Origin: Laetmonice hystrix
Lineage: Eukaryota
Length of the DNA: 64,000 nt
Direction of reading: 5' to 3'
Assembly: GCA_965235115.1 (NCBI GenBank)
Contig: OZ249443.1
Location: 6,882,001-6,946,000, forward strand
Shown here: positions 167-17,443 of the stretch, one piece after another
Layout of the letters: every line of letters begins with the position of its first letter
Numbering within the stretch: position 1 is the stretch's first letter
Notes under the pieces: generated by a model
The model's input: the letters and a program-made list of their open reading frames with translations, nothing else
Database searches by the model: none
What the model was told of the DNA's origin: nothing
Translations under genes and position numbers: made by a program

Positions 167-232
167 CTAGGTGCGCACTTGGAACTTGCCAGCCTTTGTT
201 ACGTACTTCACTCCTTTGAAAGGCTTATATTT
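167..232 (-). CDS. AP3M1: AP3M terminal coding exon (KYKPFKGVKYVTKAGKFQVRT*)
   Basis: 66 nt, ttttcag| acceptor, TAG stop at 169-167; canonical mu3 C-terminus. It follows a 7.5-kb intron. Confidence 0.95.
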   Translation of the reverse strand, partial: KYKPFKGVKYVTKAGKFQVRT

Positions 233-3200
233 CTGAAAACCCAACAAGGAAGAATTTCATAAATATATTCAAATGTTTACGAGTTGCTTTAGGCTGCAGA
301 ACTCGTGACGTGATGACATATTGGTAAAAACGGTACTGAAGAGGAGAGAAAAATATTGGCCGCCTAAAGTCTAAGCATCCTAGTAAACGGAATTAATGAG
401 GAAATGCAAGATATAGGAAGGTAGGCATGCAAGCATACAGTATGAGGGCAAAAGAAAAAAACTGACCACTCTTTTACGCAGTCTATTCTGGTTTTCTAGT
501 ACTTAGCATCTAATATTGTATTAAAGTACTTAACATGAAGCTATATCTCCTATTGCATTATGAAGATATGGGTAAGACGTGTTGGAATTCCGTGTTTACG
601 GGGATCACAAAGAAGACACGACTAATAATAAGAAGATATCACTTTGCATAACGAGATATGTATGAGATCGAGAGGCATTCCATGAAAAAATAGGTCAAGG
701 TCCCCAGGCAGCATCTCAAAAGGTCAGGCCAACCGTGTCAATTAAGGTCAAGTCTGCGTTTCTGGCACTCATGCACTTTTTCTAACCCCGTTGTATCTAA
801 AAACAAGAACTGACGGTTATTCAAACACCAAGGATTTGATTAATCTATAGGTCCTTAGAGTTTATCTGTCTAATCTCTTGTTAGCGCGCCAGCCACATGT
901 AAAAGGTATTGTGTGCAGGGGAAGGGGCACAGAACTCAAATAATGATGTGCAGGGACAGAAGGCACTTTTTACAATAAAAATAATTGCACACAAATATAC
1001 AGTGACCACATGCAAGCTTCCCCTACGTTTCCAAGTTAAATTGTTTGCATTTTTTATTATAAATTTTTGGGATATACAAATATATATCATGAATTGTCCT
1101 TTGTCACAATAAATTTAAGGAAAAGACTTAAGTGCTCGGTTTAAAATCTAAACAAACCACGACTAGCATATCAACAGCATCTTAGATTCTACAGATTATG
1201 TTCCTTTTTTAAGGGGGGGGTCCTTTTCTTCATCTAAAAACTTGGCTTCATCTGATGATCTCATGCAGTCGGCCCTGCACTTGACCTGGACTGACCTAAA
1301 TATTAATAGCCAAAGAATGAGTTTGTCTTGGTTATGGGATAATCGTTTGCTGGGGGCAATCTTGGTCAGACTGGCGGTGCCATTGGTTTACGACCCGGTA
1401 CCGCCAGGCTGTAGAATCTGTTTACACCGAGTTAAAATAGAACTGGTTCCCCTTATATTTCAGCTACTCAATAAAACGTATCACTAATCCTAACTTAAAG
1501 GGTGCCAATAACCTATTATTGATATCAGGAAAAATTACCCCGGTAAGTAACGTAAAACAATTAAATAAACAATATCTCTGTCTTTGAAAATGAAAGAATT
1601 ATAACATGACTTGTCATATTCATGAAAATATCTCGCCGACCCTATGATGGCATTCAGGACCATTTAAATAAAGAATTAAGGAAAACATGTTTACTGTACT
1701 AAGAAAATAAATAAGTAACCAAGTAAACAAACAAAATATTAAACAAATGTTAAAAAATGATCCATTCATACTTACTACTTGCTTTGACAAAATGAACTCT
1801 CTAACTCTAAATTACAGAAAGGAATCCACAAAACTCCTGCCTCGCCAGTCATGGCACCTAGCAACCCCCCAGTAAAAGTCTACGAATCGCGACAACCTCA
1901 AATCTCTTTAACTAATAAAGGTTAGATTGTGGTAGTGCGTTAAGATGGGACGAGAAACCATTGATTAAGTCCTTTAATTGACTGAACGTTTTAACAGGAC
2001 TAATATTTTCCGAGATCTAGAAGGAATAAATCATGCCTAAACAAAATAAAAAAGATATTAGAAAAAAAAGAGATACTTTTTTTCCACTTCAAAGCTGCCT
2101 CATGCCTCAACACTAAAAAAATGATGTACCTCGGAATAAATAAGTAAATATTTCACAACCTCAATTTCACAATATGTCTGTTATATAGACTGGATAGCAA
2201 CAAAACCTACTGGTTACAGTCCTTTCTATTATATCAAGAGCTTAACTTAAATTGTGCAAGTCCCGTGCATGCTATAAGCCACCTCCACGACCGCAGGATA
2301 AGCCGACAATTATATATATCTACACAACAAGAAATAAAAGTATCCTTCTGGAAAGAATTTAGAAGAATCAAACAAAGGTTCCATGTACTCGTACCGACGG
2401 TCCCGTGTTGTATATTAAAGCCACATGCTACCATGTAGAACGTCCTACACCCACTGTCACTGCCATCATACGTTTCTAAACTATCAATTCAAAATAACCT
2501 TTTCATTCCGTGTGTGTACTTCTATACCCCCTGAAGCTCCGGACAAATTTGTAAACTTGGTGTTCTCCGTCAACAAATAAATGCATGCTGCTCACACTTG
2601 ATCTAATCTCAAACATATGTGGATAGGAACAGTAAAAAGCGATATTTGCATAGAAAAGAAAATTGTATGTAAAAATCAACTGTTTGAATAAATGCGAAGC
2701 GATGACAATTGTTAGAAAAGAATAAAATTATTCAAAGAAAAGGTCATGCATAAATTTGGTAATTTGAGGAGGTTCTTGGAAAGCGACCGAAAGGGTTCTG
2801 TACATAGGTCTGTGATAAACACAGGAATATGGGCCTGGATTCTGCCGCTAGGGGGCGGGGCAGTCTGGCAGGAGGATGGCAGGCTTGCACTAGTGAGATG
2901 CTGTCTAAAGGGAGATTGGAAGAGATTCCATCTAGGCATACTTCATTTTTGATAAGCGTCAAGGCCTTCGACACGCCTTTCTGATCACTGGAATCCCTGT
3001 CCTAAAAAAGGAACGTACAACATTGTGAGCGGGCCGAGCCAATTGTCATCAAGATGTGGCAAGACATAATCAAGGATACACAAAATACAAGACGGGGTTC
3101 TGACAGAGGCGCCACCTAGTGTTAACTTGGAGTACCAATGAACTGACAACAATTCCCGTTACACTTAGCTACAAGAAGAAAGGAATGTATATTGTTCGAT

Positions 3201-6200
3201 TCATACAATCAGTGTCATTAATAACGAAGACTTTCAACCTTCCTATCCTAAATTACACAATAATTTAAGCTTTAATCGTTCAACAACAAAAAACTGAACA
3301 ACCAAAACAAGTCCAACGACTGAAAACAAAGTGTCTTATAACTAAAGATCTAGACTGAATCTCTCTTCAAAATAAAGGATTCCTGAAACAGTCAAGTGTA
3401 TAACTGATGGCCCTTCGACTGGATCAATTTCTGAGGTTTGTTTAAAGGTAGTGCAGACTGACAAATCATGTGAAGCAATGAAACATCAGTGAGGGAAACA
3501 CTGAGTGCCTTACGATCTGTTCCCCTGTACATATCTCAATACTGGTAACCTGGAACCCATTCAATTCCTTGCCTACTCAACACTACGATCATCATGTATT
3601 AGGAAGAGTCCGCGTTCACTTGGGGAACATGGTGCCCTTCTCTTTTGAGATGCGGCAAAGGCTCCTTTCACTTCAGTACCACATTGGATAGCCCCATGGG
3701 AGAACTTCGCAGCAGGGTCTGCTTTCTCAAACCCTTTTGTTCAATTAGCTACGACGCCTTTCCTACTAAATATCCGCTGCCGTCAACCGTGTGCCTGATA
3801 GCTGACACTCAGGACAGTGTTTTTTTATATCTAATTTCTGGTCTCAGGTATAGATCAGACTATTCTCGGTGACAGCGGTTTGGTTGGCCATCTTTTGGTC
3901 AGCTCATGTCATTTAGGCGTTAGCTTTCCTTGGCAACAGATCAAAGTAGAACATTTTAGAGGTTGTCTGGTGGGTTCAGATCAAACATCGTGCAAAGTCT
4001 AGTTTGTTAGGGTTAAATAGTAAGCACATGTGGAATGCATTTCATGAAAGCAACATTATGGGCGACCTGAAGTTTTTAAATACCGGTATATAGTAAGTTA
4101 GTCGGAATTTCTCCTAAACCATAGCAACAAACCAGATTGAAAAAAAGAGAAAATCATTAGTTTGGCTACCTTTATGGGAGAATACTAACATTGTACCATC
4201 TGAACTCATCAAGGTAAAATCTCCTTATATCAGTGCAGCGTCCAAGTTTAAAACCAACAACGTTAAACCATCATAGGTAATGTTCAATACCCTGAGGGTC
4301 AACTGTACGCTGAGGGTCAACTGTATGCTGAGGGTCAACTGTATGCTGAGGGCCAACTGTATGCTGAGGGTCAACTTACACTGAGGGTCAACTGTATGCT
4401 GAGGGTCAACTGTACACTGAGGGTCAACTGTACACTGAGGGTCAACTGTATGCTGAGGGTCAACTGTATGCTGAGGGCCAATTGTATGCTGAGGGTCAAC
4501 TTACACTGAGGGTCAACTGTATGCTGAGGGTCAACTGTACACTGAGGGTCAACTGTACGCTGAGGGTCAACTGTACGCTGAGGGTCAACTGTATGCTGAG
4601 GGTCAACTGTATGCTGAGGGTCAATTGTATGCTGAGGGTCAACTTACACTGAGGGTCAACTGTATGCTGAGGGTCAACTGTACACTGAGGGTCACCTGTA
4701 CGCTGAGGGTCAACTGTACGCTGAGGGTCAACTGTATGCTGAGGGTCAACTGTATGCTGAGGGCCAACTGTATGCTGAGGGTCAACTTACACTGAGGGTC
4801 AACTGTATGCTGAGGGGTCAACTGTATGCTGAGGGTCAACTGTACACTGAGGGTCAACTGTACGCTGAGGGGTCAACTGTATGCTGAGGGTCAACTGTAT
4901 GCTGAGGGTCAACTTACACTGAGGGTCAACTGTATGCTGAGGGTCAACTGTATGCTGAGGGTCAACTTACACGGAGGGTCAACTTACACTGAGGGTCAAC
5001 TGTATGCTGAGGGTCAACTGTATGCTGAGGGCCAACTGTATGCTGAGGGTCAACTTACACTGAGGGTCAACTGTATGCTGAGGGGTCAACTGTATGCTGA
5101 GGGTCAACTGTACACTGAGGGTCAACTGTACGCTGAGGGGTCAACTGTATGCTGAGGGTCAACTGTATGCTGAGGGTCAACTTACACTGAGGGTCAACTG
5201 TATGCTGAGGGTCAACTGTACACTGAGGGTCAACTGTACACTGAGGGTCAACTGTATGCTGAGGGTCAACTGTATGCTGAGGGCCAATTGTATGCTGAGG
5301 GTCAACTTACACTGAGGGTCAACTGTATGCTGAGGGTCAACTGTACACTGAGGGTCAACTGTACGCTGAGGGTCAACTGTACGCTGAGGGTCAACTGTAT
5401 GCTGAGGGTCAACTGTATGCTGAGGGTCAATTGTATGCTGAGGGTCAACTTACACTGAGGGTCAACTGTATGCTGAGGGTCAACTGTACACTGAGGGTCA
5501 ACTGTACGCTGAGGGTCAACTGTACGCTGAGGGTCAACTGTATGCTGAGGGTCAACTGTATGCTGAGGGCCAACTGTATGCTGAGGGTCAACTTACACTG
5601 AGGGTCAACTGTATGCTGAGGGGTCAACTGTATGCTGAGGGTCAACTGTACACTGAGGGTCAACTGTACGCTGAGGGGTCAACTGTATGCTGAGGGTCAA
5701 CTGTATGCTGAGGGTCAACTTACACTGAGGGTCAACTGTATGCTGAGGGTCAACTGTATGCTGAGGGTCAACTTACACGGAGGGTCAACTTACACTGAGG
5801 GTCAACTGTATGCTGAGGGTCAACTGTATGCTGAGGGTCAACTGTACACGGAGGGACAACTGTACACGGAGGGGCACCCGTAGGCTATAGCTGCCTGAGT
5901 GATCCTGTATGCCGCTATCAATAAAACATTTGAAATTCCTCATGATCTCCGAGGAAGATCAAAGGAAAGTCCCATGATTATTTCAAAATTCACACGTTTT
6001 CAGCCAAACGCCGACCACTGACTGACTTCCACGGTTTTTACCCATGAAATCTTTTTTCTATTGTCCTTGATTTCTTACTTGGAACTAATTATTCTCACAA
6101 ATCAATCACTGCTTGCAGACACTATGACCTCCTTTCGAGTCTTCAAGTCCCGTTAAACACGGAACTCCAGTCCCGTTAAACACGGAACTCCAGTCCCGTT

Positions 6201-9200
6201 AAACACGGAACTCCAGTCCCGTTAAACACGGAACTCCAGTCCCGTTAAACACGGAACTCCAGTCCCGTTAAACACGGAACTCCAGTCCCGTTAAACACGG
6301 AACTCCAGTCCCGTTAAACACGGAACTCCAGTCCCGTTAAACACGGAACTCCAGTCCCGTTAAACACGGAACTCCAGTCCCGTTAAACACGGAACTCCAG
6401 TCCCGTTAAACACGGAACTCCAGTCCCGTTAAACACGGAACTCCAGTCCCGTTAAACACGGAACTCCAGTCCCGTTAAACACGGAACTCCAGTCCCGTTA
6501 AACACGGAACTCCAGTCCCGTTAAACACGGAACTCCAGTCCCGTTAAACACGGAACTCCAGTCCCGTTAAACACGGAACTCCAGTCCCGTTAAACACGGA
6601 ACTCCAGTCCCGTTAAACACGGAACTCCAGTCCCGTTAAACACGGAACTCCAGTCCCGTTAAACACGGAACTCCAGTCCCGTTAAACACGGAACTCCAGT
6701 CCCTTTAAACACGGAACTCCAGTCCCTTTAAACACGGAACTCCAGTCCCGTTAAACACGGAACTCCAGTCCCGTTAAACACGGAACTCCAGTCCCGTTAA
6801 ACACGGAACTCCAGTCCCGTTAAACACGGAACTCCAGTCCCGTTAAACACGGAACTCCAGTCCCGTTAAACACGGAACTCCAGTCCCGTTAAACACGGAA
6901 CTCCAGTCCCGTTAAACACGGAACTCCAACAGTTTTCTCAGATGACAGACTTGTATCCTAATGATACGATAAACAGTGAAGTTTTATCCTCTAAATTCTT
7001 TACACTCTATTTGAGATAATCTTTAAATACACAGCATGCCAAAATACATTAACTCTAATCTCGCAATCTGTACATTCTAGTTAGGTTACCATGACATAAC
7101 ACAAGCAAAGCACCAAAACTCTACAGATTATCGCAAGTATTCTACCAACAACAGCCGAGAACATGGTTGAGCTGTAAATTATACCAGTACCCCCAAGACG
7201 TTTGTGAAGGAAAGACATAGAGAGAAAACCCATGGAATAGACTCTTTGAAGAAAGGTTCTGTTTCTTTATTTATAATATTTTCAAATTATCATCAATTAG
7301 ACAATATCCTGGCTCACTGAACATTGCATTGTGCAATTCTGTCCTTCAATTTTAACTACCGGGTACATACCCATTATTTAATCAAATACCTTTTGGTACG
7401 TCCAGTCATAGTTGTTCATCAATCAACATACCTCCAAGATTAGCACTTTAACGGAATCTCTTATTTTTTCAGACGAGGATTCTGTCTTCACAATTTATGT
7501 GAATTTTGTCAGATGTTTCTATTACTGTTGCGTTGATCCATTCAATAAATCTACTAGGGCAACCACAATGTAACTTTTGTTTTCATTTAGTAACATCAAG
7601 AGACAAAATAAGTTAACACGGTGGGGCTTAACAAAAAAAACGATGCAACTATATTGGCCGACATAAAGGTAGTAAACTAGCCACGACACAAAGGATTAGC
7701 CCGTCAGTGAGGCGATGACCTACCTCTCCGTACATGTCCAAACGGTTAACCTTGATCCCAGACACAGCCAACTGATTGATGGTGAACGCCACCTGGTGTG
7801 TAAAAATAAACTGAGATCACCTTCTCAACAAATGTGCATCTACTTAAACTTTGTCACAAGTCTATAAGAGATGGGTAGTTCCAATTAAAAGCATTAAATC
7901 TAGTGGAGTATCTGCCTCACAACAAAGCACTGATTTGACAATCTGCGCCGAAGGCTCAAGACTCGACAGTGAATGAGGACAAGAGTTTGTCAAACTGCGG
8001 TCAGATGAACTGGACCTACTTACTGAAATGGTTGGATTGGAATCAGGAGGGGGTACTCCCGTCTGTAGGTTTATCTGTAACCAAAGTAAACAGTATCTCA
8101 CAACAAAGGTATATCACTAATATACATAATCTATGCACATCCTCTTTGTGATCAATACTTTACATAAAATAAAAACCAGAAAAAAAGGTCAATCGCAATA
8201 ATACTGGTATTAGTATCCAACTGATTTTTGGGGGATGACCTAATTTCTTATCTATATATTTCCACCTAGGTCTCACATAAATTACAAATCACTGCTTTTT
8301 CCAGTGGACACTCACCGAGCCACGGATGTTGGGTAACTTTGTTGTGTCGATCTTACCAACGTCCCATGTCATGACCTTGGCGACGGGATCAAAGGAATAC
8401 TTCCCTTGGGTCGGGGTCAAGGTCACATTGAGGACAGCCTTTGAGAAGGGGATCTCCACGACAACATTCTCCACCTGTCAATGTAAGTCAAACACCAACC
8501 ATTGTACAGTAAGAAACAATTGTACGGTAAGAAACGATTGTACAGTAAGAAACCATTGTACAGTAAGAAACCATTGTACAAGAAACCATTGTACGGTAAG
8601 AAACCATTGTACAGTAAGAAACCATTGTACATGGGACCAGGCAATGGGCCTCACAAAAACACGGGTCCTGAACGTTTGATACTCGGCTCTTCATCCAAAC
8701 TCGTCCATGATCTGATAGACATATCGACAGGCTTATCAAACTTTCAATATGTCAACTGTCACAAGACAAGGAAAATCTGTAAAACTTGGGTCAAAAACAT
8801 TATAAAATGGGTAACGGTAAAATTAGGTACCGGTATACATGCTTCTGGAGGGCTTCACCAGATATGTACCGGTAAGTTTACATACACCCTGGCAGCCCCA
8901 AATAATTTATTATCACATCGGTATTGACAACACAACCATCAAACAACTATATAATACTACTTGAGACAAGTACTGGAGTACCAACTACTATTACCTGATT
9001 GCTGGTAGTCAGTAAAGGAGAGGACTATTTAAATAAATAGTGCTTGCTGCCTGGTACACAGTACTAGTATATCCGGTACCAATCAACATTACCCACTCAC
9101 TGTTGAAAGTACAATAGGAATGGCTAGGAAGAACGTGTGTGCTATTCTAGGCTATAAGATTATACTCTTAATAGAATTTTCTTTGTCTAAGTGCGATTTA

Positions 9201-12200
9201 ACAGTGATTGTAGGAAAATTTTTACTCCAAAATATGGTAATCATGTCATCATGAACTGATAATGACATCAGGCCAGTACCAACTCCCCCCCCCCCCCCAA
9301 CCGTTCTGACATAGAGAAAGAGACCCCGATATATCAAACTCCAACCAGTAGTTAAAGTCTCAGACGGCTGCAATTTGACAACTGGATATCGGTGATGATA
9401 AACTTGGAGATCTCATATTAGAAACACGCAGTTAGTAGAATTCACATTACAGTAAATTTGTTCTAGTGTAGTGTGTCAGTGTTAATGTACCCGGTAATAC
9501 TTACATGAAATACACTACGTCTATGAAAGATTACAACACCTTAATGAAATCATAAAATCATTATACTTTACGGAGTCTTATAATCATTACTTTTTCCATG
9601 AAAGCAAACTGTTTTTATAATGCCCCAGTTTTTATAATACTGAATCCTAAATTATTGTTTGATTATTTTTGTAAAAGTCACTGAAACTGTGTTGTGTTCT
9701 GACACAAAACGAAGAAACCAAGTTGTGATGTTCTAAAACAGAGTAAAATATTTTTAAACTGGTGGTTAACACGCAGTGTTTATGGAATATTGGTGTATCA
9801 TAAACTACGAGTCAACCATGCAGCATTGTGTGTGTGTGAGGTGACTTACCAGTAGAAACCGTCTGCCACTCTACAAAGCCAGCCACAAGGTGGACACTGT
9901 TAACTTGTGTGTCATTATATTACAGCTACTCACTGCAGTCTACCACAGCAAAGATTTTACTAACAATATTGATTTCTCTTCTCTCTTTCTTTCAAAAGGT
10001 ACCGATATACTAACTGTTTTGTACAGTCGTAACAAATGAAAACATGCTTGCAATTTGTAACATTGGGGGAGGGAATGATGATGAAGAAAATGTCTGGCGT
10101 CCTGTGACTTCTGTTGGAAATAAAATGATGACTTCTAGATTCTAACTGACACACCTGTGTTCGACGTTTTCCTTGCCTTAGCTACCTTTGATTTATAAAC
10201 ACACGGTCTCCTTAACACACAGTAGTATGATAAACAAATCAATATTTCACCCAGAATGGTGACCTGCAGGCACAGTTTTTAGGCAACAGAATGTCACACA
10301 CAAAGAGTGTTCGGTTTTTTTAAATCCACGGCCCATGTAGCCACTGTACAATCACATGGAGGCTCAATCTGAGCTCATGTCCTGGTCCTGTAATTCCCAT
10401 CTGTGTTAACACACATTCCTACATTACTTACCTCATTTACATCAAGCAGAAAATTTTCTTAAACCTTTTTTTTCTTTTTTTTTTACAAAATCAGGCCAAA
10501 AACACATTTTAAGTCAGGAGTCTTCATGATATCGTAGATTGCTTGTTTTTTTAAAGACCACAGTTATCTGTTTAACTTGACTTACTGATTTTCCCATGGT
10601 TTGTTTTGGTCCCACAGTGATGTCGAGCTTGCCGCTTCCTCCATCCTTGAAGGATATACTGTGTCGCAGGTATACTGGGATTGCGACCATACTAAAACAC
10701 ACACCAGGGGGTGCCACTGTGAGATACCATATAATACGGGACTGCAGAAAAAAATGTCAATTTTATCTACCAGTTCTAAATTTACAGGACTTTCGTTCAG
10801 CATTCCACGGTTATCGAGACCTGGATATTTCTAATAAGTGTTTCACAATGAGAAGAAAAACCTACTTTTGAGATCCGATGTGGTAGGAGATGAGACGGAA
10901 GCTGCCATCAGGAGGTACAAAGGAGAGAATCCTCTCGCTCTGAAAGGTCATCAGAGGTCAGGTCAGCGATAAAGGTATCACACAGCTAACTGTTTCTCAG
11001 AACTTTTTCTTTCAAATAGATCAAACGGATTGTGCTACTGGTACGTTACCTCCCAGCGTTTGAAGCGAACACATGGATGAAAGCTGACGTCATCAAGGAG
11101 TCGGGGGTTGACAAATGACAACGTCAGGTCAGGCATCCCACTCAGTTTGATGAGACAGTCGACCTGCAGGACAGAGTTTGCATTAGAAATAAATGTATCC
11201 CCTGGTTATGTTAATGTTCTTTTCTCAATCTCAAGCAATAAATACTACCGGTACATATAAAACTAGTCATATTAACATTTGGTAGGTACAACTCACATAT
11301 CCTTGGATCTCTGCAAATACTGTTGATCCTGACTTGTCAATAATAGCATCGATTTCTTCAATGACATCAAAGTAGGCTTCATTGTTGGTATACTTCACGC
11401 CTGTTCGTCTCCATGGCACGTTGGATAGTTGACCTGTCGGTAATGTGGCACTAACTCTGAAGGAAGGGGGTGGAAAGAGTTTAACATCACATTCTAAACA
11501 TCTCAAAATGAAACACCCATGGTTTGTCTCAAGAAAAAAACTACAATACACAATCTTTAAAAATTTATGAATCCATTTTTCAACATATATTTTTTAAAGA
11601 GGAAAACTGCACTATTTAATGTAACAGAAGAACATGATGGAAATAGATATCAACTTTGAAAGTTTTAACTTCTACATACAAATACTGGTACAACTATTTA
11701 CATATCACATAAAATGAATTTAAGCATTTTCTGCTTACAATTATACCTAGCTCGTATGACATATACTCATTAGTACAATTAAACACAGTATGTACAAAAA
11801 TCTAGTGCCATTAATTATACTACAATGCTTCATGCAATTGTAGTTCAGAGATTAAATGTGAAATTCTCCATCCTTTACAGCAGATGTTGTGGGTGACCTG
11901 GCCGCTACTTCAGCACCCCACGGGTTGCATGAACTTACGATGTAGATTTTCCTGTCACTGTATCAGTGATGGTACGGAGGAGGTTGGGTGGCTTGATGAG
12001 TTCCTTCAGTATATTAGACTCAGTCGCCAGCGGGAAGCCATTGTCCAGCATCTCATCCAGCAGCTGAGTTAGCCAATCAGGACGGCAGGCAAACACACGC
12101 AATGAGAACACAAAGACAACAGGCAAAAAGTTCTCAGAACAAATTGATGTTAAAGTGGAGGTAAAACGTGAACAAGTTCCAAAATCGTCTTTATCCCTAA

Positions 12201-15200
12201 TGTTGACATCTTGATGATCGGAGCATGAGAACCAACACATACCTCGATCTGATGTCGATCGGATTTTCGTACACACTGAATTCAATCCTTTAAACATAGG
12301 ATCTTAACTGCAGCATGTTTGCTAGCAGTCAGGTGGCCATTTCATAGGTAGGAGCATTATTATTCTGTTGCATATTTTACCTCCACTTTAAAGGATTTAA
12401 AGGATTAGAAACTGTCACTCAAACTTCCAACTAAGGCCACCATCTTATATGTGACATTTAATCTTTTGAGGCCACTGAATACCAGAATTCTGGAGGCATT
12501 ACTGCCTATATAATATTTGTGCAGAAATTTAAAATTTAACTTGGTCGTAGGCCTAATCTGGTTATAAATTGTTATTCAGGACATGACTGTAATGATGGAG
12601 TCTCCATGAAGTAAAACCCAAGTGCAGATTTACAAGGGCCGTAGATAGAAGTATGGTTAACATAACAGAAGAAGAGTCACCAGTGAAGAACTGATGCAGT
12701 TCTACGCAGAGTTTGTTAGGCAAGACAAGACTTGAGGAGAATGGCTGAACTAACAAACTTCAATTTCAATCTCATGCTTTCTGTTATCATTTTTAAAGGA
12801 GAATTGTGGGACCTATGAGCAACTCAGCAAGACTAGTGGTTTCTTCTACTTCAATGCTGCAAGTCAAACTTGTACTGATGACGATGCAAGTCTACAGTTT
12901 AGTTATTGCAGCAAGGTTGTCGTTTTTAGTTAGTTATGGCAAGATCTCAACGACTGCTCTCTGGGCTAACCTCAGCAGATCCGTCAGTCAGGTATAAATC
13001 CAAATTTTTGGAGTCACAACCCTTGACAAAACATGGTGAGCTGCCAGTCGCGATCTTGAGACCTTGACATACCCCAGTAATCATCTCAAACCTGTTTTAT
13101 AACACTCCCACCAAAATGCTGGCAAATGCTGTCCCATTGTAGCTTCGTTATCTCAGGCTCAGAGGCAGAATTGCAAATAAATTGCACAGAAAAATTGAAA
13201 AATTTAAAGCATGCATGTCTTTTAAACTTTGAATTATGAGTGTACAGATGTCCACATTTGAATCATATGTATTACTTTGAACAGTATGTTCTCTCTTCAA
13301 GCTTAAGAATATTGGAGAATATAAAATTTAATTCAGCAACATAGAAGTTTGAGATGACACTGGCCAACATTTAATGGCAACGAAACACTTCTGTAATATG
13401 AACACAAATTTAATTTCTGCAAACAGTCTTGCACAGGCCTTCATAACTTACGTTTCAGACCTTCCTGTAAAGCGACTCTTCACCTTACGTATTATACTTG
13501 GTGGTCGAATAAGCTCTTTCAAAACATTAGACTCTGTGGCAAGTGGGAAGCCATTGTCCAACATCTCATCTAATATCTGGCAAAATCAATTTATATTTAC
13601 TTCGAGAGGGGTTCTCAGCTAATTTTTTATAATAGGACGGAGTGTGTAAATCTCAAGATTAATATTCATTTGCCGTATCCCAGTCCCTCCAGGTCCCCAA
13701 ATTATAATTATTTTGAGATCTCAGCACCTTTTCTCTGATCTCTGAGAACATAAATTTTGATGGGAAGAAAATGAACAAATTACCATTGAACATCAAACAA
13801 TCTCATGCCTGTAATTGCTGGGATATCAAACTGACAGCTTATGGAAGTAGTACTCACCTCATAAACAATAACATAATTCTCTTTAATTGTGGATTCTGTA
13901 CAATCAGTGAAGTAATCTTCAAATATGTCAATCACCCGATGCAGGAACTCTATCACAAACAGTGGCGGAACTAGAAATGAAAAAAAAAACATACTGGTAG
14001 AATCACGAACTCGAAACAGTGGCATTTCTTATACACCAGCCATTCAACGTAGATTTAAAAATTCCACAACAACTGAAGGGCCTCAGGAATTGATCAGTTA
14101 CCTTCCGTCATTGTGACAGCCACTACATACAGCTGATGTCGGAATATGTTGATGAGGTAGTGATGTGGAGTTGCAATAACAGGTGCAACATCTTCTGGTG
14201 ACGCAGCCTTCATGGAAAGAAAACAAATATTTTGTCTACAAAAGTCATTTTCTCCCCATCTTTCAGACTACTGTAGGCATGACCATATCTAACTTTGGTA
14301 TCTAAATAATATGCCTGCTCAAAATAAACATTTTTAGTATAATTTGATAAATTATGGGTATAAGCAGTCAGCATTACAACTAAATGAATGTTTTTCCTGC
14401 TCCCTAACGTTTTTTGGACCGCTGTTACGTTTAGATCTTATATTAGCTGCCTGACCATATCCTAAACTACTGTAAACAACTACATGGTGTTAACATTGCC
14501 CTGACTATATCATAAACTGACTGATCTTATTTACCAGCCTGACCATATCCTAAAAAACTGACTGACCAAGACACATTCTGACTGATCATTTTTAAATAAA
14601 TGATTTCTAATAAATTAATAAAATCACATTAAGTTTCATTCTAACCTTGCTCTGTGCCTCAAAGAAGTAGTCACATATAGACCGATGAATTACACTTTTC
14701 CAGTGTTTTTCCATAAATACGTCTCTGCAAAAGTGAAGACAGATTCAAAGCTCATGTGTTTTAACGGCACAGTTTCACCAAGTCAAACTGTAGCAGTCGT
14801 CCAGACCTACATAAACATGAAAATCTTATCATACATATACATGTACACCAGCCATAACCAATCTTCATGACTTTTACTATCCTGCTTGTTTCTACGAAAC
14901 ACCCAGCTACCATCCCCAGGTGCAGACCTAGGCAGGGCCCTCAACCTTAACCATGCCTTGCTGGCCCTTGGCCTCATGCCCTTTTCCCTCAACCCCTCCC
15001 AACCAGCCTATATTAGACGACTCATGCACACTACAAGATGCTACTAGTACTTTACTGAGGCCTGTATGCCACAGATATTTACATGGTACATACAATGCCC
15101 TTCTGTTAATGACAGTGTAACAGTAAAACGGGATCCATTGCATAAACTTTTCCAGAGATAATCTGTCCTGTCTGCAAAGAAATATATTACAATGATCTAA

Positions 15201-17443
15201 CTTGATTTACTTCTGACAATAGCGAAATGGGATAAGTAAACATGCCATGCTTCTCTTAGACGGTAAAAAATGAGATCAATTTTTACCCAGACTTCATACC
15301 TGCCAACATTTGGTCGACGGAATCCGGAATCATCCCAAATTGACTTTTGATACTCTCTCTATGGGCCCCTTTCTTTTATCCATCTCTCTCTCCTCCTCCT
15401 CTCCATTACTGACAGAAAGCACAACTCTGATTTACTAAACTTACCGTAATCTTCCGTGTATAAGCCGCACTTTTTTCCTCCTCAAATTAATCATAAATCA
15501 GGGGTGCGGCTTATACATGGCCACAAGCATCTGGAGACTTCTAGACTACGTCTATGTGGAGACCAAGTCATCCCTAGGTGGCGCCACCAACGCTATTATT
15601 ACACCCCTAGTGGTGGTATTGCGAATAAAGTATTAATGTTATATAGAGAGTTATAGATTTAAAGAAACATATAGAGAGAGATATAGACAGACTCACAGAG
15701 AAAGATTCTGGGCAAGATCATCATTTGAATGGGACAAAGGACAGGCATTTCTGATGGGAACTGGCCTGCTTTATGCCCACAACCCGTTAATACCCATTGT
15801 TTTACGTGTGACTCTTTGCTGACTAAGACAGTGAGATGGATTCCCAAAATAAAAGTGGGTCCTATTGTTTTCAATGCCCCGTGAAAGCAACGGCCCGTTT
15901 AACAATGGGAGGTGATGGTGGCACCGGCGTCTGGCCAACCTCTTTTCACACTATGGCCAAGCTGGTGAAACACCTAGCTGATACACGTCTCAGCATGTAG
16001 GGTTGATGGTTGGGGCCCAACTTTGCTACGACTGGCATCAGAAACGTGAATTTTTTTTTCTCTGACTTTTGCTCTAAAAACGGGGGTGCGGCTTATACAT
16101 GGCCGCGGTTTCTACACGGAAGATTACGGTAGTCTGGAGATCTAGTTATATGGCAGAGACCATAAACGATCTTTTTGCCAGTGAAATTCTGCCATGAGCG
16201 AGAGATTTAACATGTATTTGGAGGGAATCTATACTTATTCTGTAAATTTTATGATTCCGTAATATTTAGAGAGTAATCCAAAATGCGGAATACCGCATTT
16301 AAATCGGAAACATTCCGCAGAATGCGGAAGGGTTGGCAGGTATGAGACTTGTTCATATTCCTGCCCATGAGCACCTGGACCCCATTTCACACTAAGCCGG
16401 CGACATCGCCAAATGGACAGCGCAGCCCCATATAAGGTAATATGTTGCCCGTTCTAGCGACATGCCCCATTGCTTTAACGTTGGCCGCAACAGGCGACAT
16501 TTATTAAACAGGCCCCTGTCCGACTAAACACCAAAACAGACCATTTTTATCTGTAGCCAGTAGGTCGGTATATATTCCAAGGAAGGTTTCAATCAGTTTC
16601 AATATATTAGCTCGGTTTCGGTGTTTAGTCACAATCTGTGTCCACTACTGCCAAAAACAGAAAGCATGCATGGCCCCAATGCTTCGTTGTAAGGTAATGC
16701 TAATCAAGCATCAAGGTGATAAATCATGTCAACGACTTTAAGCGTGGTATAAATGGGTAACATGACACATCCGCCCGTAGCCATGTCCGCCCGGTCATGT
16801 CCGCCCCCCCGGGATGTAGCCCCTTCATCATGTCCGGCCCTCACCGCTCTGCTCAAGTGGCGCCCGGCAAGGGACACGTTACCTACGAGGTGGCTCTCAT
16901 TTGTTGGGCACTTAGCGATTACAATAGTTGATCTAGAGTTGTTGATACACTCCTCTAACTCAGTAGACTGTCCTAGTCACATTGACGGCTTTTCCCGGGA
17001 CCACGGCGGCAGGGTGGGTAGAGTCGAGTGTCTATCACAGAGGCACGGTGGGCAGGCGGGCATAGTACCGAGGGGCGGACATGACCGGGCGGACATGGCG
17101 ACGGGCGGACATGTCGTGTATAAATGTATCTATAGAAGAGTTTTTATATTAAGCCAGTTACAACCAACGCGGAATCGAATGGGCACTGACTGAAGGCGAA
17201 GCGGTTAGCCTCTCTCTCTATGTCTATGACAGTAAAGTGACGCCGCCACGCAAATGACCTCAAAATAACGTTTCATGTAGACACTTCCTTCGATCCCTTC
17301 CACAGTTACAGAGACAGTCAGTGCCAGTGGGGATGGACTGACTGAGTGGGCCGGTGGGCGGTGTCTGTCTGGACACCGAGTACAGCCACAATCTGACGTC
17401 ATACTCACCCAGACGTGTTGATTATAAACAAACTGTGAATCAT
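167..17443 (-). CDS. AP3M1: AP-3 adaptor complex mu subunit (mu3), complete spliced gene, 418 aa
   Basis: Exons joined in frame through GT-AG sites: 17409-17443, 14646-14724, 14102-14207, 13858-13970, [13452-13576 OR 11939-12063], 11297-11456, 11050-11163, 10866-10939, 10586-10691, 8316-8474, 8024-8074, 7724-7792, 167-232. Total 1257 nt = 418 aa + TAG. The translation (MIHSLFIINTSGDVFMEKHWKS...DEMLDNGFPLATESN...VPWRRTGVKYTNNEAYFDVIEEIDAIIDKSG...KYKPFKGVKYVTKAGKFQVRT*) closely matches vertebrate mu3A/mu3B as recalled. AP3M1 versus AP3M2 cannot be resolved; probably a single pro-orthologue. Confidence 0.96.
2800..3850 (+). mobile_element. Decayed non-LTR retrotransposon (LINE) reverse-transcriptase fragments
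   Basis: Short degenerate motifs in RT order: KAFDT (aag gcc ttc gac acg, 2961-2975), QQGLLSQTLLFN (about 3710-3745; cf. QGSxLSPxLFN) and LIADTQDSVFLY (about 3795-3830; cf. LFADDxxLY). Stops and frameshifts interrupt them. Confidence 0.4.
4292..5875 (+). repeat. Minisatellite, 18-bp unit CTGAGGGTCAACTGTATG (17- and 19-bp variants), with an 806-bp higher-order duplication
   Basis: Direct reading; rare variants recur at +806 (4475/5281, 4621/5427, 4971/5777). Confidence 0.97.
6146..6927 (+). repeat. Near-perfect minisatellite, 23-bp unit AGTCCCGTTAAACACGGAACTCC x34
   Basis: 782 bp / 23 = 34 units; only two adjacent units carry a G>T change (about 6700-6725). Confidence 0.98.
7724..7792 (-). 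CDS. AP3M1: AP3M coding exon 12 (VAFTINQLAVSGIKVNRLDMYGE)
   Basis: 69 nt, caccag| acceptor, GAG|gtaggt donor. Confidence 0.93.
8024..8074 (-). CDS. AP3M1: AP3M coding exon 11 (INLQTGVPPPDSNPTIS)
   Basis: 51 nt, ttacag| acceptor, TCA|gtaagt donor. Confidence 0.9.
8316..8474 (-). CDS. AP3M1: AP3M coding exon 10 (VENVVVEIPFSKAVLNVTLTPTQGKYSFDPVAKVMTWDVGKIDTTKLPNIRGS)
   Basis: 159 nt, tgacag| acceptor, TCG|gtgagt donor. Confidence 0.94.
8499..8630 (+). repeat. Minisatellite, 18-bp unit CCATTGTACAGTAAGAAA x about 7
   Basis: Direct reading; one unit is shortened by 3 bp. Confidence 0.95.
10586..10691 (-). CDS. AP3M1: AP3M coding exon 9 (MVAIPVYLRHSISFKDGGSGKLDITVGPKQTMGKS)
   Basis: 106 nt, ttttag| acceptor, TCA|gtaagt donor. 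Confidence 0.94.
10866..10939 (-). CDS. AP3M1: AP3M coding exon 8 (SERILSFVPPDGSFRLISYHIGSQ-N)
   Basis: 74 nt, tttcag| acceptor, AA|gtaggt donor; SFVPPDG motif. Confidence 0.94.
11050..11163 (-). CDS. AP3M1: AP3M coding exon 7 (VDCLIKLSGMPDLTLSFVNPRLLDDVSFHPCVRFKRWE)
   Basis: 114 nt, ctgcag| acceptor, GAG|gtaacg donor; LSGMP and FHPCV motifs of mu adaptins. Confidence 0.95.
11297..11456 (-). CDS. AP3M1: AP3M coding exon 6 (VSATLPTGQLSNVPWRRTGVKYTNNEAYFDVIEEIDAIIDKSGSTVFAEIQGY)
   Basis: 160 nt, ccttcag| acceptor, TAT|gtgagt donor; start of the mu homology domain (NEAYFDV motif). Confidence 0.95.
11939..12063 (-). CDS. AP3M1: AP3M alternative exon 5B (LLDEMLDNGFPLATESNILKELIKPPNLLRTITDTVTGKST-S)
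   Basis: 125 nt, aactcag| acceptor, TC|gtaagt donor; closer to vertebrate mu3 (LLEEMLDNGFPLATESNILKELIKPP). Confidence 0.9.
13452..13576 (-). CDS. AP3M1: AP3M alternative exon 5A (ILDEMLDNGFPLATESNVLKELIRPPSIIRKVKSRFTGRSE-T)
   Basis: 125 nt, ttttgccag| acceptor, AC|gtaagt donor, open frame. Paralogous to exon 5B with the same length and phase. Missed by the ORF track. Confidence 0.85.
13858..13970 (-). CDS. AP3M1: AP3M coding exon 4 (VPPLFVIEFLHRVIDIFEDYFTDCTESTIKENYVIVYE)
   Basis: 113 nt, ttctag| acceptor, GAG|gtgagt donor. Confidence 0.95.
14102..14207 (-). CDS. AP3M1: AP3M coding exon 3 (AASPEDVAPVIATPHHYLINIFRHQLYVVAVTMTE)
   Basis: 106 nt, aag| acceptor, G|gtaact donor; longin-domain sequence. 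Confidence 0.92.
14646..14724 (-). CDS. AP3M1: AP3M coding exon 2 (DVFMEKHWKSVIHRSICDYFFEAQSK)
   Basis: ttgcag| acceptor, AAG|gttaga donor, 79 nt, phase-compatible with neighbours. Confidence 0.93.
15295..16344. mobile_element. Non-autonomous DNA transposon, 13-bp TIR CATACCTGCCAAC and 6-bp TSD AGACTT (hAT-like, 6-bp TSD class), interrupted by a nested MITE
   Basis: catacctgccaac at 15295-15307 and gttggcaggtatg at 16332-16344; agactt directly flanks both ends (15289-15294, 16345-16350); CGGAA subterminal motifs. Confidence 0.85.
15444..16129. mobile_element. Tc1/mariner-pogo type MITE, 17-bp perfect TIR CCGTAATCTTCCGTGTA and TA TSD
   Basis: TA|ccgtaatcttccgtgtataagccgcac ... tacacggaagattacgg|TA; subterminal GGGGTGCGGCTTATACATGGCC occurs twice (about 15501 and 16083); no transposase ORF. 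Confidence 0.88.
16756..17117. mobile_element. MITE-like element with about 45-bp imperfect inverted arms built from CATGTCCGCCCG subrepeats; possible 9-bp TSD GTATAAATG (Mutator-like)
   Basis: The left arm (about 16767-16808) is the reverse complement of the right arm (about 17072-17114); gtataaatg occurs at 16747-16755 and 17118-17126. The extreme termini match poorly. Confidence 0.6.
17409..17443 (-). CDS. AP3M1: AP3M coding exon 1 (MIHSLFIINTS-G)
   Basis: ATG at 17443-17441 in context caccATG; donor GG|gtgagt; upstream cag/cag acceptor implies a non-coding 5' exon. Confidence 0.92.

What the first reader, a model, noticed from the sequence alone, without database searches (positions are those of the whole stretch)
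11939..13576. Tandemly duplicated, mutually exclusive exon pair in the AP-3 mu gene
Seen: two paralogous exons of exactly 125 nt, with the same phase (0 in, 2 out) and intact AG/GTAAGT sites, 1388 bp apart. In their first 26 codons 23 residues are identical while 12 of those codons differ synonymously, which indicates long purifying selection on both copies. Including both shifts the frame to a TGA about 19 codons into 5B. Skipping both gives AGT TAG immediately in exon 6. Only one-or-the-other yields the 418-aa protein. Established: vertebrates make ubiquitous mu3A and neuronal mu3B from two genes. Inference: this animal may make two AP-3 mu isoforms from one gene by mutually exclusive splicing, a convergent route to AP-3 specialisation. 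I do not recall this being described, but could not search.
Basis: partly seen in the sequence, partly recalled or inferred. Interest (0 to 1): 0.88.

Follow-up and report, generated by a model that had tools for sequence, protein, structure and literature searches.

The report
Either-or exon pair in AP-3 mu
The only AP-3 mu (vesicle-coat adaptor) gene of this annelid-like worm carries two old, still-coding versions of one exon, and each mRNA can use only one. The choice swaps the protein's short membrane-inserting helix between an uncharged and a strongly positive version, and a related vent worm makes an mRNA with the second version.

Summary
Exons 5A (13576-13452) and 5B (12063-11939), on the minus strand, are both 125 nt, with AG/GTAAGT sites and the same phase. 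Using both, or neither, gives an early stop. Using either one gives a 418-aa AP-3 mu. This is the genome's only AP-3 mu gene.

The pair is old. The same A-then-B layout occurs in Capitella teleta, Paralvinella palmiformis and four unnamed worm contigs. A always keeps its splice sites and phase (125, 128 or 131 nt).

A fully spliced 1,962-nt mRNA contig from an alvinellid joins exon 4 to A to exon 6 without B. Between two alvinellids, dN/dS of A is about 0.13-0.16, so A is translated and under selection. No RNA data exist for the window's own species.

Exon 5 encodes residues 112-153. That includes the mu3(139-148) amphipathic helix that two cryo-EM studies place in the membrane. B gives LLRTITDTVT (net 0) and A gives IIRKVKSRFT (net +4). 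The likely effect, which is inferred, is two AP-3 forms with different membrane binding.

I found no paper describing this, and public gene models miss or garble A. The scan has noted similar exon pairs in other genes of this genome, but not this one.

The parts
167..17443 (-). AP-3 complex mu subunit gene, coding part. It has 13 coding exon positions: 17443-17409, 14724-14646, 14207-14102, 13970-13858, then 13576-13452 or 12063-11939, then 11456-11297, 11163-11050, 10939-10866, 10691-10586, 8474-8316, 8074-8024, 7792-7724 and 232-167.
   Evidence: Exons were found by tblastn with Capitella AP-3 mu (P0365) and joined at GT-AG sites. Both isoforms are 418 aa. The B form is 362/418 identical to Capitella P0365. 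It is the only AP-3 mu locus in the genome.
13858..13970 (-). Constitutive exon 4. It ends on a codon boundary (...VIVYE).
13452..13576 (-). Exon 5A, the fast-evolving alternative copy. It is 125 nt with an AG acceptor, a weak pyrimidine tract and a GTAAGT donor.
   Evidence: Orthologues occur in L001, L003, L004, L018, Paralvinella (L008) and Capitella (L009). The orthologous exon is present in the spliced mRNA contig L012.
13466..13495 (-). Codons for residues 139-148 in the A form, IIRKVKSRFT. This is a cationic (+4) version of the mu3 linker amphipathic helix.
   Evidence: Helix position is taken from PMC13178560 and from the AlphaFold2 models.
12064..13451 (-). The 1388-nt intron between 5A and 5B. 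It is long enough to be spliced out, so it gives no steric block. It contains a high-copy repeat at about 12150-12430 with 17-nt perfect terminal inverted repeats.
11939..12063 (-). Exon 5B, the canonical copy. It is 125 nt with a good pyrimidine tract and a GTAAGT donor. It is 90-100% identical in protein to exon 5 of other annelids and of oysters.
   Evidence: It is the form found in all other assembled worm transcripts.
11953..11982 (-). Codons for residues 139-148 in the B form, LLRTITDTVT. This is an uncharged, Thr-rich version of the same helix.
11297..11456 (-). Constitutive exon 6. It starts with the last base of the split codon. Its in-frame TAG at codon 2 is exposed if both copies of exon 5 are skipped.

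Best explanation
This is a real, ancient pair of mutually exclusive exons, made by tandem duplication of exon 5 in the single AP-3 mu gene of an annelid-type worm. Each mRNA must contain exactly one copy. Both copies are 2 mod 3 in length, so including both or neither shifts the frame into an early stop, and such mRNAs would be unproductive. 5B is the canonical, probably default exon. 5A has the weaker acceptor and is probably a regulated alternative.

The exon encodes the last helices of the N-terminal longin-like domain, which are nearly the same in A and B. It also encodes the first half of the linker to the mu-homology domain. That half contains the amphipathic helix mu3(139-148), which inserts into the membrane in human AP-3 coats.

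The switch keeps the hydrophobic face of that helix (positions 139, 140, 143, 147). It changes the polar face from Thr/Asp-rich and uncharged (B) to Lys/Arg-rich (A: +4 here, +2 to +4 in relatives).

Shown: the anatomy, the frame logic, the conservation, the selection on A, and an A-only mRNA in a relative. Inferred: that this species splices in 5A; that the two AP-3 forms differ in how strongly, or to which acidic lipids, they bind and bend membranes; and that the choice is cell-type regulated.
For: The same A-upstream-of-B pair occurs in L001/L017, L003, L004 and L018 (metagenome-derived worm contigs), in Paralvinella palmiformis (L008) and in Capitella teleta (L009). In all of these, A keeps AG...GT sites. 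Its length changes only by whole codons (125, 125, 125, 125, 128, 128, 131 nt).

Synonymous sites between these taxa are saturated. A still keeps 54-76% protein identity, while B keeps 90-100%. In a tree of exon-5 peptides, all A copies sit on one side of a 99/97-supported branch, apart from B copies and outgroups.

P0366/L012 is a 1,962-nt Logan contig with an uninterrupted 419-aa ORF. It matches the 12 exons of the Paralvinella gene one by one (78-95% nt identity). It uses A (L008 12214-12341) and not B. Between that mRNA and Paralvinella, dN/dS is 0.13-0.16 for A (dS about 1), against 0.001-0.045 for the rest of the gene.

A acceptors have poorer pyrimidine tracts than B acceptors (mean 0.52 against 0.68, n=6 pairs, one-sided Wilcoxon p=0.03).

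Pfam places the N-terminal domain at 1-128 and the MHD at 166-418. AlphaFold2 puts the only linker helix at 139-148 (B form) and 140-147 (A form). [quoted passage not shown] PMC11185636 shows that this helix binds membranes as a fusion protein. Helix charge is +2 to +4 in all seven A copies and 0 in all B copies, with similar hydrophobic moments.
Against: There are no RNA data for the window's own species. Two run searches found only three DNA runs of one sample.

Only one A-form transcript was found in the whole protein collection, against more than ten B-form transcripts from other worms. A is therefore a minor or restricted isoform, or is hidden inside 90% clusters.

A evolves much faster than the rest of the gene. 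A group of worm-like metagenome contigs has exon 4 followed by a single exon 5 and no A copy, so A is dispensable in some lineages.

The AlphaFold2 models have pLDDT below 50 across the linker. The functional difference between the helices is untested. I found no conserved RNA structure or other cis element that would enforce the choice.
Confidence: 0.8

Rival explanations
1. 5A is an unused relic. It is a duplicated exon that is no longer spliced into mRNA in this species and is slowly decaying.
For: No RNA evidence exists for this species. A evolves fast. It has a weaker acceptor. It appears to be absent in one group of worm contigs.
Against: In this species the frame is open, the AG and GTAAGT sites are intact, and the length is exactly 125 nt. 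In the first 26 codons, 12 synonymous changes stand against only 3 replacements. Across taxa with saturated synonymous sites, A has no stops and only codon-sized length changes. dN/dS is 0.13-0.16. A relative uses it in mRNA.
Confidence: 0.08
2. 5A works mainly as a poison exon. Including it together with 5B shifts the frame and sends the mRNA to decay, which tunes AP-3 mu dosage rather than making a second protein.
For: Double inclusion gives a TGA 19 codons into 5B, far upstream of the last exon junction. The A-B intron is 112-1630 nt, long enough to be spliced, so double inclusion is physically possible.
Against: A poison exon needs no conserved peptide. Yet A keeps its reading frame, codon-sized indels, an invariant first half, a conserved hydrophobic pattern and the K-x-K motif in the helix, with dN/dS well below 1. 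The one A-containing mRNA found is A-only with a full 419-aa ORF. The two roles are not exclusive.
Confidence: 0.06
3. The A copies arose by independent, recurrent duplications of exon 5 in different worm lineages. In that case the pair in this window would be young and lineage-specific.
For: Owenia fusiformis has a second copy in the opposite order: the canonical copy first and a divergent copy 1.25 kb downstream. That copy groups with canonical exons, not with A. Fast-evolving copies can attract each other in a 41-residue tree.
Against: All A copies lie upstream of B. They share derived residues (Lys at positions 31 and 33 of the exon in the six aligned copies, with Capitella not aligned; loss of the TxTDTVT motif in all seven). 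They form one side of a 99/97 branch. Within this window, A and B differ at 12 of 23 conserved codons synonymously, so the pair is old.
Confidence: 0.05
4. The pair is an assembly artefact or a collapsed haplotig.
For: None beyond the general possibility. No single short-read contig spans both exons.
Against: The two contigs have equal single-copy depth and overlap at 12320-12337. The break lies at a high-copy repeat. The copies differ at 35% of nucleotides. The same arrangement occurs in six or more other genomes.
Confidence: 0.01

Closest known systems
Mutually exclusive exons derived from tandem exon duplication, also called tandem duplicated exon substitutions (surveys: PMC5740500, PMC8373072, PMC9741552, PMC9013439)
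   Same: Two adjacent homologous exons have equal length and phase. Both are under purifying selection and are old. They give isoforms that are identical except for one homologous segment. Both-in or both-out breaks the frame.
   Different: I did not find this gene, AP-3 mu, mentioned as such a case in any paper I could search. The pair is confined to part of the annelids. One copy evolves far faster than the other.
Vertebrate AP3M1 (mu3A, ubiquitous) and AP3M2 (mu3B, neuronal) paralogues
   Same: Both give two versions of the AP-3 medium subunit in one organism.
   Different: The vertebrate versions come from two genes that differ along the whole protein and have almost the same linker helix (ILRSVVNSIT against ILRTVVNTIT). 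Here there is one gene, and the only difference is residues 112-153, mainly the charge of the helix.
The mu3 linker amphipathic helix of human AP-3, residues 139-148 (PMC11185636; PMC13178560)
   Same: Both exon versions keep the position, length and hydrophobic periodicity of the helix. AlphaFold2 predicts the helix at 139-148 or 140-147 in the worm proteins.
   Different: The human helix has net charge +1. The worm B helix is 0 and Thr-rich. The worm A helix is +2 to +4. No natural isoform variation of this helix has been described in those papers.
Phospho-regulated mu-linker helices of AP-1 and AP-2, as contrasted with AP-3 in PMC11185636
   Same: A short helix in the linker between the N-terminal domain and the MHD acts as a regulatory element.
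   Different: [quoted passage not shown] Here the variation is made by splicing, and the AP-3 helix faces the membrane. Whether the Thr-rich B helix is phosphorylated is unknown.
Owenia fusiformis AP-3 mu linker variants (public models CAH1786571.1 and CAH1786572.1)
   Same: Alternative splicing diversifies the same linker of the same protein in another annelid.
   Different: Owenia uses two alternative micro-exons after exon 5. It also has an unannotated second exon-5 copy downstream of the canonical one, not an upstream A-type exon.

Membership tests
Mutually exclusive exon pair from tandem exon duplication | Neighbouring exons of one gene are homologous to each other | tested here: met
   27/41 residues and 81/125 nt are identical. 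The exons are adjacent and on the same strand.
Mutually exclusive exon pair from tandem exon duplication | Same length class and phase, with usable splice sites on both copies | tested here: met
   Both are 125 nt, enter in phase 0, and have AG and GTAAGT. Orthologues of A are 125, 128 or 131 nt with AG/GT.
Mutually exclusive exon pair from tandem exon duplication | Only one-or-the-other gives an open reading frame | tested here: met
   A+B gives a TGA 19 codons into B. Neither gives a TAG at codon 2 of exon 6. Either alone gives 418 aa.
Mutually exclusive exon pair from tandem exon duplication | Mature mRNAs contain exactly one copy (in this species) | not testable with these tools
   No RNA run holds this locus. 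Only three DNA runs of one sample were found.
Mutually exclusive exon pair from tandem exon duplication | Mature mRNAs contain exactly one copy (in relatives) | tested here: met
   The A-only full-length mRNA contig L012/P0366 from an alvinellid is spliced at all 12 junctions. B-only full-length transcripts come from other worms (P0262, P0263, P0266, P0268, P0269 and others). A-form and B-form mRNAs were not seen in the same species.
Mutually exclusive exon pair from tandem exon duplication | Both copies are conserved under purifying selection | tested here: met
   For B, dN is 0.01-0.11 with saturated dS. For A, dN/dS is 0.13-0.16 between two alvinellids, and the frame stays open in all seven A copies.
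AP-3 complex medium (mu) subunit | N-terminal longin-like domain (PF01217) plus C-terminal mu-homology domain (PF00928), and closest similarity to AP-3 mu rather than AP-1, AP-2 or AP-4 mu | tested here: met
   The window's B isoform is 362/418 identical to Capitella P0365. P0365 has PF01217 at 1-127 and PF00928 at 166-417. It matches human AP-3 mu-1 chains at E=1.7e-221, against 6e-52 for AP-1 mu.
Two-gene mu3A/mu3B system of vertebrates | Two separate AP-3 mu genes | tested here: not met
   A six-frame search of the whole 627-Mb genome finds AP-3 mu exons only in this window. The other hits are 30-53% identical mu-like genes.
Mutually exclusive exons enforced by steric hindrance (intron too short to splice) | The intron between the two copies is below the minimal spliceable length | tested here: not met
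   The A-B intron is 1388 nt here and 112-1630 nt in relatives.
Mutually exclusive exons enforced by incompatible U2/U12 splice sites | One flanking intron has U12-type sites | tested here: not met
   All donors around A and B are GTAAGT or GTGAGT, and all acceptors are AG.
Mutually exclusive exons enforced by competing RNA structures (docking and selector sites) | Conserved intronic complementary elements, one of which pairs alternatively with sites next to each copy | tested here: inconclusive
   The inverted-repeat scan of 11457-13857 gave only short, imperfect pairs and the ends of a repeat element. Introns of the relatives are too diverged to test for conservation.

The most novel reading that the evidence does not exclude
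Part of the annelids evolved a splice switch that exchanges the membrane-inserting amphipathic helix of AP-3. It swaps an uncharged, Thr-rich helix for a Lys/Arg-rich one. This would give two AP-3 coats with different affinity for acidic or phosphoinositide-rich membranes, or different tubulating power. The cationic form would be switched on in particular cells, perhaps through the GCAUG elements seen about 160-270 nt downstream of exon A in four of six species. That would be natural isoform-level tuning of a coat's own membrane-bending element, a form of regulation not described for any AP complex.
Probability: 0.35. Interest if true: 0.75.

Novelty: new member of a known kind. Interest (0 to 1): 0.62.

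Why it matters
How AP-3 is regulated is an open question, because the complex is constitutively open (PMC11185636). Its mu3 linker helix was recognised as a membrane-inserting element only in 2024-2026. A conserved natural switch that changes just the polar face of that helix is a ready-made experiment. The two 10-residue versions can be compared directly in the published liposome and tubulation assays.

For genome annotation, this shows that public annelid models miss the A exon (Capitella) or fuse both copies into a wrong protein (Paralvinella). For evolution, it adds a case where alternative splicing in one gene does a job that vertebrates are usually said to do with two genes, although it acts at a different place in the protein.

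Tried and rejected
- **RNA for this species.** Two run searches, one with the 2.8-kb region and one with exon 4 to 5A, found only three DNA runs of one sample. I used the single read-laying run on those runs, and it could only confirm the assembly.
- **A-form transcripts in protein collections.** The 50%-cluster library searched with the 5A peptide gave only genomic read-through fragments (P0001, P0093, P0120). A region search with P0001 gave no further A forms. A region search with the Paralvinella A exon gave the single mRNA P0366. Isoforms are over 90% identical, so they hide inside clusters. The clusters I could open held only B forms.
- **Steric hindrance and U12 incompatibility as the exclusion mechanism.** Both are rejected on intron lengths and splice-site sequences.
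- **Competing RNA structure.** Nothing convincing was found.
- **Molluscs.** The oyster gene has a single exon 5, and its introns 4 and 5 are about 150 and 290 nt, which leaves no room for a second copy. Oyster isoforms X1 and X2 differ at one residue elsewhere. The Lineus isoforms differ near the C terminus, not in exon 5. The Lineus genomic locus was not retrievable.
- **A second duplicated exon in the window.** Exon 8 is duplicated in L001 but is absent here and in the other loci.
- **Organism names.** I could not get names for L001, L003, L004, L012 and L018. The accession numbers occur in no searchable paper.
- **Residue numbers for the helix.** The numbers are not in PMC11185636. I took them from PMC13178560.


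Full report
**1. Observation**

- Exon 5A is 13576-13452 and exon 5B is 12063-11939. Both are 125 nt, preceded by AG and followed by GTAAGT, and separated by 1388 nt.
- Both start on a codon boundary after exon 4 (which ends at 13858) and end two bases into a codon that exon 6 (from 11456) completes.
- The peptides share 27 of 41 residues. In the first 26 codons, 23 residues are identical and 12 of those codons differ synonymously.
- Joining A and B runs into a TGA 19 codons into B. Joining exon 4 directly to exon 6 gives Ser-stop.

I rebuilt the whole gene with a Capitella AP-3 mu protein as guide. It has thirteen coding exon positions between 17443 and 167, all GT-AG, and gives 418 residues with either copy.

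**2. Not an artefact, and a single gene**

Short-read contigs of two DNA runs lie on 11300-12337 and 12320-14100 at 58x and 60x. They break only at a repeat that reaches a depth of thousands. The two copies are therefore linked, single-copy sequence.

A six-frame search of the whole 627-Mb genome finds AP-3 mu exons only in this window. The other mu-like matches are 30-53% identical.

**3. Conservation**

A search of 1.84 billion cluster representatives with the 5A peptide gave three fragments whose tails resemble A rather than B. Their contigs, and further loci reached through named proteins, show the same layout of exon 4, A-type exon, B-type exon, exon 6 in:
- three unnamed worm contigs, L001/L002, L003 and L004;
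- Paralvinella palmiformis, L008;
- Capitella teleta, L009;
- one more metagenome contig, L018.

In every case A has an AG acceptor and a GT donor. Its length is 125, 128 or 131 nt, so length has changed only by whole codons and the phase is kept.

Synonymous sites between these taxa are saturated. B nevertheless stays 90-100% identical in protein and A stays 54-76% identical.

In a maximum-likelihood tree of the exon peptides, all seven A copies fall on one side of a branch with 99/97 support. The other side holds all B copies, both Owenia copies and the single exons of molluscs, a nemertean, arthropods and a vertebrate. With only 41 columns and fast-evolving A copies this is suggestive, not proof. 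The shared position upstream of B and shared derived residues point the same way, to one duplication before these lineages split.

The pair is not universal:
- The oyster has one copy and no room for another.
- Owenia has a second copy, but downstream of the canonical one and of canonical type.
- A set of worm-like metagenome contigs has exon 4 followed by one exon 5 and no trace of A.

**4. Is A used?**

There are no RNA runs for this species.

A region-restricted search with the Paralvinella A exon found P0366, a 419-residue protein on a 1,962-nt Logan contig, L012. Its ORF is uninterrupted. It matches the twelve exons of the 17.5-kb Paralvinella gene one after another at 78-95% nucleotide identity. 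The stretch between exons 4 and 6 matches the A exon, not B. It is therefore a mature mRNA (or a copy of one) of another alvinellid that contains A alone.

Between that mRNA and Paralvinella, dN/dS of the A exon is 0.13 (NG86) to 0.16 (LWL85) at a dS of about 1. The upstream exons give 0.03-0.045 and the downstream exons 0.001-0.01. A is therefore translated and constrained, though far less tightly than the rest of the protein.

All other assembled worm transcripts and gene models carry B. A acceptors have poorer pyrimidine tracts than B acceptors (0.52 against 0.68, six pairs, p=0.03). B thus looks like the default exon and A like a regulated one.

**5. How exclusivity is secured**

The A-B intron is 112-1630 nt and all sites are U2-type. 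This rules out steric hindrance and U2/U12 incompatibility. An inverted-repeat scan found no convincing competing structure.

What is certain is the frame rule: transcripts with both or neither exon carry early stops, so only single-inclusion mRNAs can make AP-3 mu. That such transcripts are removed by nonsense-mediated decay follows from general knowledge and was not tested.

**6. What the switch changes**

Pfam places the N-terminal domain at 1-128 and the mu-homology domain at 166-418. Exon 5 (residues 112-153) therefore covers the end of the N-terminal domain and the first half of the linker.

PMC11185636 reports that the mu3 linker contains an amphipathic helix lying in membrane density, and that it binds bilayers as a fusion protein. 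[quoted passage not shown] Worm and human proteins align without gaps up to residue 150. AlphaFold2 predicts the only linker helix at 139-148 in a B-form protein and 140-147 in the A-form protein, at low confidence.

The helix is therefore encoded entirely in the variable part of the exon: IIRKVKSRFT in A (13495-13466) and LLRTITDTVT in B (11982-11953). Across species:
- The hydrophobic positions are kept and the hydrophobic moments are similar.
- Net charge is +2 to +4 in all A copies and 0 in all B copies.
- B has four Ser/Thr residues in the helix and A has zero to two.

The best-supported mechanism is a splice switch between a neutral and a cationic version of AP-3's membrane-inserting helix. 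The switch itself is shown. Its effect on membrane binding is inferred.

**7. Comparison and novelty**

This is a textbook tandem-duplication exon pair in kind. As an instance I found no description of it. Full-text searches combined mutually exclusive exons with AP-3, AP3M1/AP3M2, Capitella or annelid, and mu3 isoforms, and none returned a paper on it.

Public models do not record it either. Capitella's model uses B only. The Paralvinella model strings A, a spurious 17-residue bridge and B into a 436-residue protein.

The analogy with vertebrate mu3A/mu3B is loose, because those paralogues have almost the same helix.

Earlier notes of this scan list similar exon pairs in other genes of this genome and call it annelid-like. 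That agrees with the closest relatives found here, but none of those notes concerns this locus.

**8. Verdict**

I rate it a new member of a known kind. Interest is moderately high because the switch targets a newly recognised functional element of AP-3.

Noticed in passing
window 12150-12430 (inside the 5A-5B intron): A high-copy interspersed repeat. Contig depth rises from about 60x to 3,500-12,000x here and the short-read contigs break. It is flanked by a perfect 17-nt inverted repeat (12150-12166 / 12375-12391), which looks like a MITE.
   Followed up: partly
L001 7306-7386 and 7671-7751: In this unnamed worm contig, exon 8 of AP-3 mu is also duplicated in tandem (FQSEKVLSFIPPDGAFSV... and ...SERILSFVPPDGNFRV...). 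This may be a second either-or pair. It is absent from the window and from L004, L005, L008, L009, L010 and L011.
   Followed up: partly
L010 (Owenia fusiformis) 5047-5171, 6425-6549, about 8236-8274 and about 10472-10516: Owenia has a canonical exon 5 followed by an unannotated, intact second copy (125 nt, AG/GTAAGT). Two alternative micro-exons, used in the two public models, insert 12-14 residues into the same linker. The mu3 linker seems to be a hot spot for splice variation in annelids.
   Followed up: partly
L008 (Paralvinella palmiformis, model KAK2140150.1 = P0258): The public gene model fuses the A exon, a spurious 17-residue bridge and the B exon, and it drops part of exon 6. The result is a wrong 436-aa protein.
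   Followed up: yes
introns downstream of the A exon: window about 13214 (position +238), L001 +210, L003 +216, L004 +162 to +271: GCAUG, the core of the Rbfox-type splicing-enhancer motif, lies 160-270 nt downstream of exon A in four of six species. It is also found downstream of B in several. I noticed this post hoc and the statistics are weak, so it is only a lead.
   Followed up: partly
G000:C21:5736847-5738094 (locus L013), outside the window: An intronless 431-codon open frame, 30% identical to AP-3 mu along its full length. It is probably another adaptor mu subunit, or a retrocopy of one.
   Followed up: no
window 232-7724: The last intron of the gene is about 7.5 kb, far longer than the others. 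I did not examine its content.
   Followed up: no
window 8480-8740 (intron between the exons at 10586 and 8474): A short tandem repeat gives long repetitive ORFs on both strands (for example NHCTVRNHCTVRN...). It is probably a minisatellite.
   Followed up: no
window 11931 and 13980: The reads' contigs differ from the assembly by G>A at 11931 (intron, 8 nt after the 5B donor) and by one base fewer in the T run at 13980 (intron 3). Both changes are non-coding.
   Followed up: no
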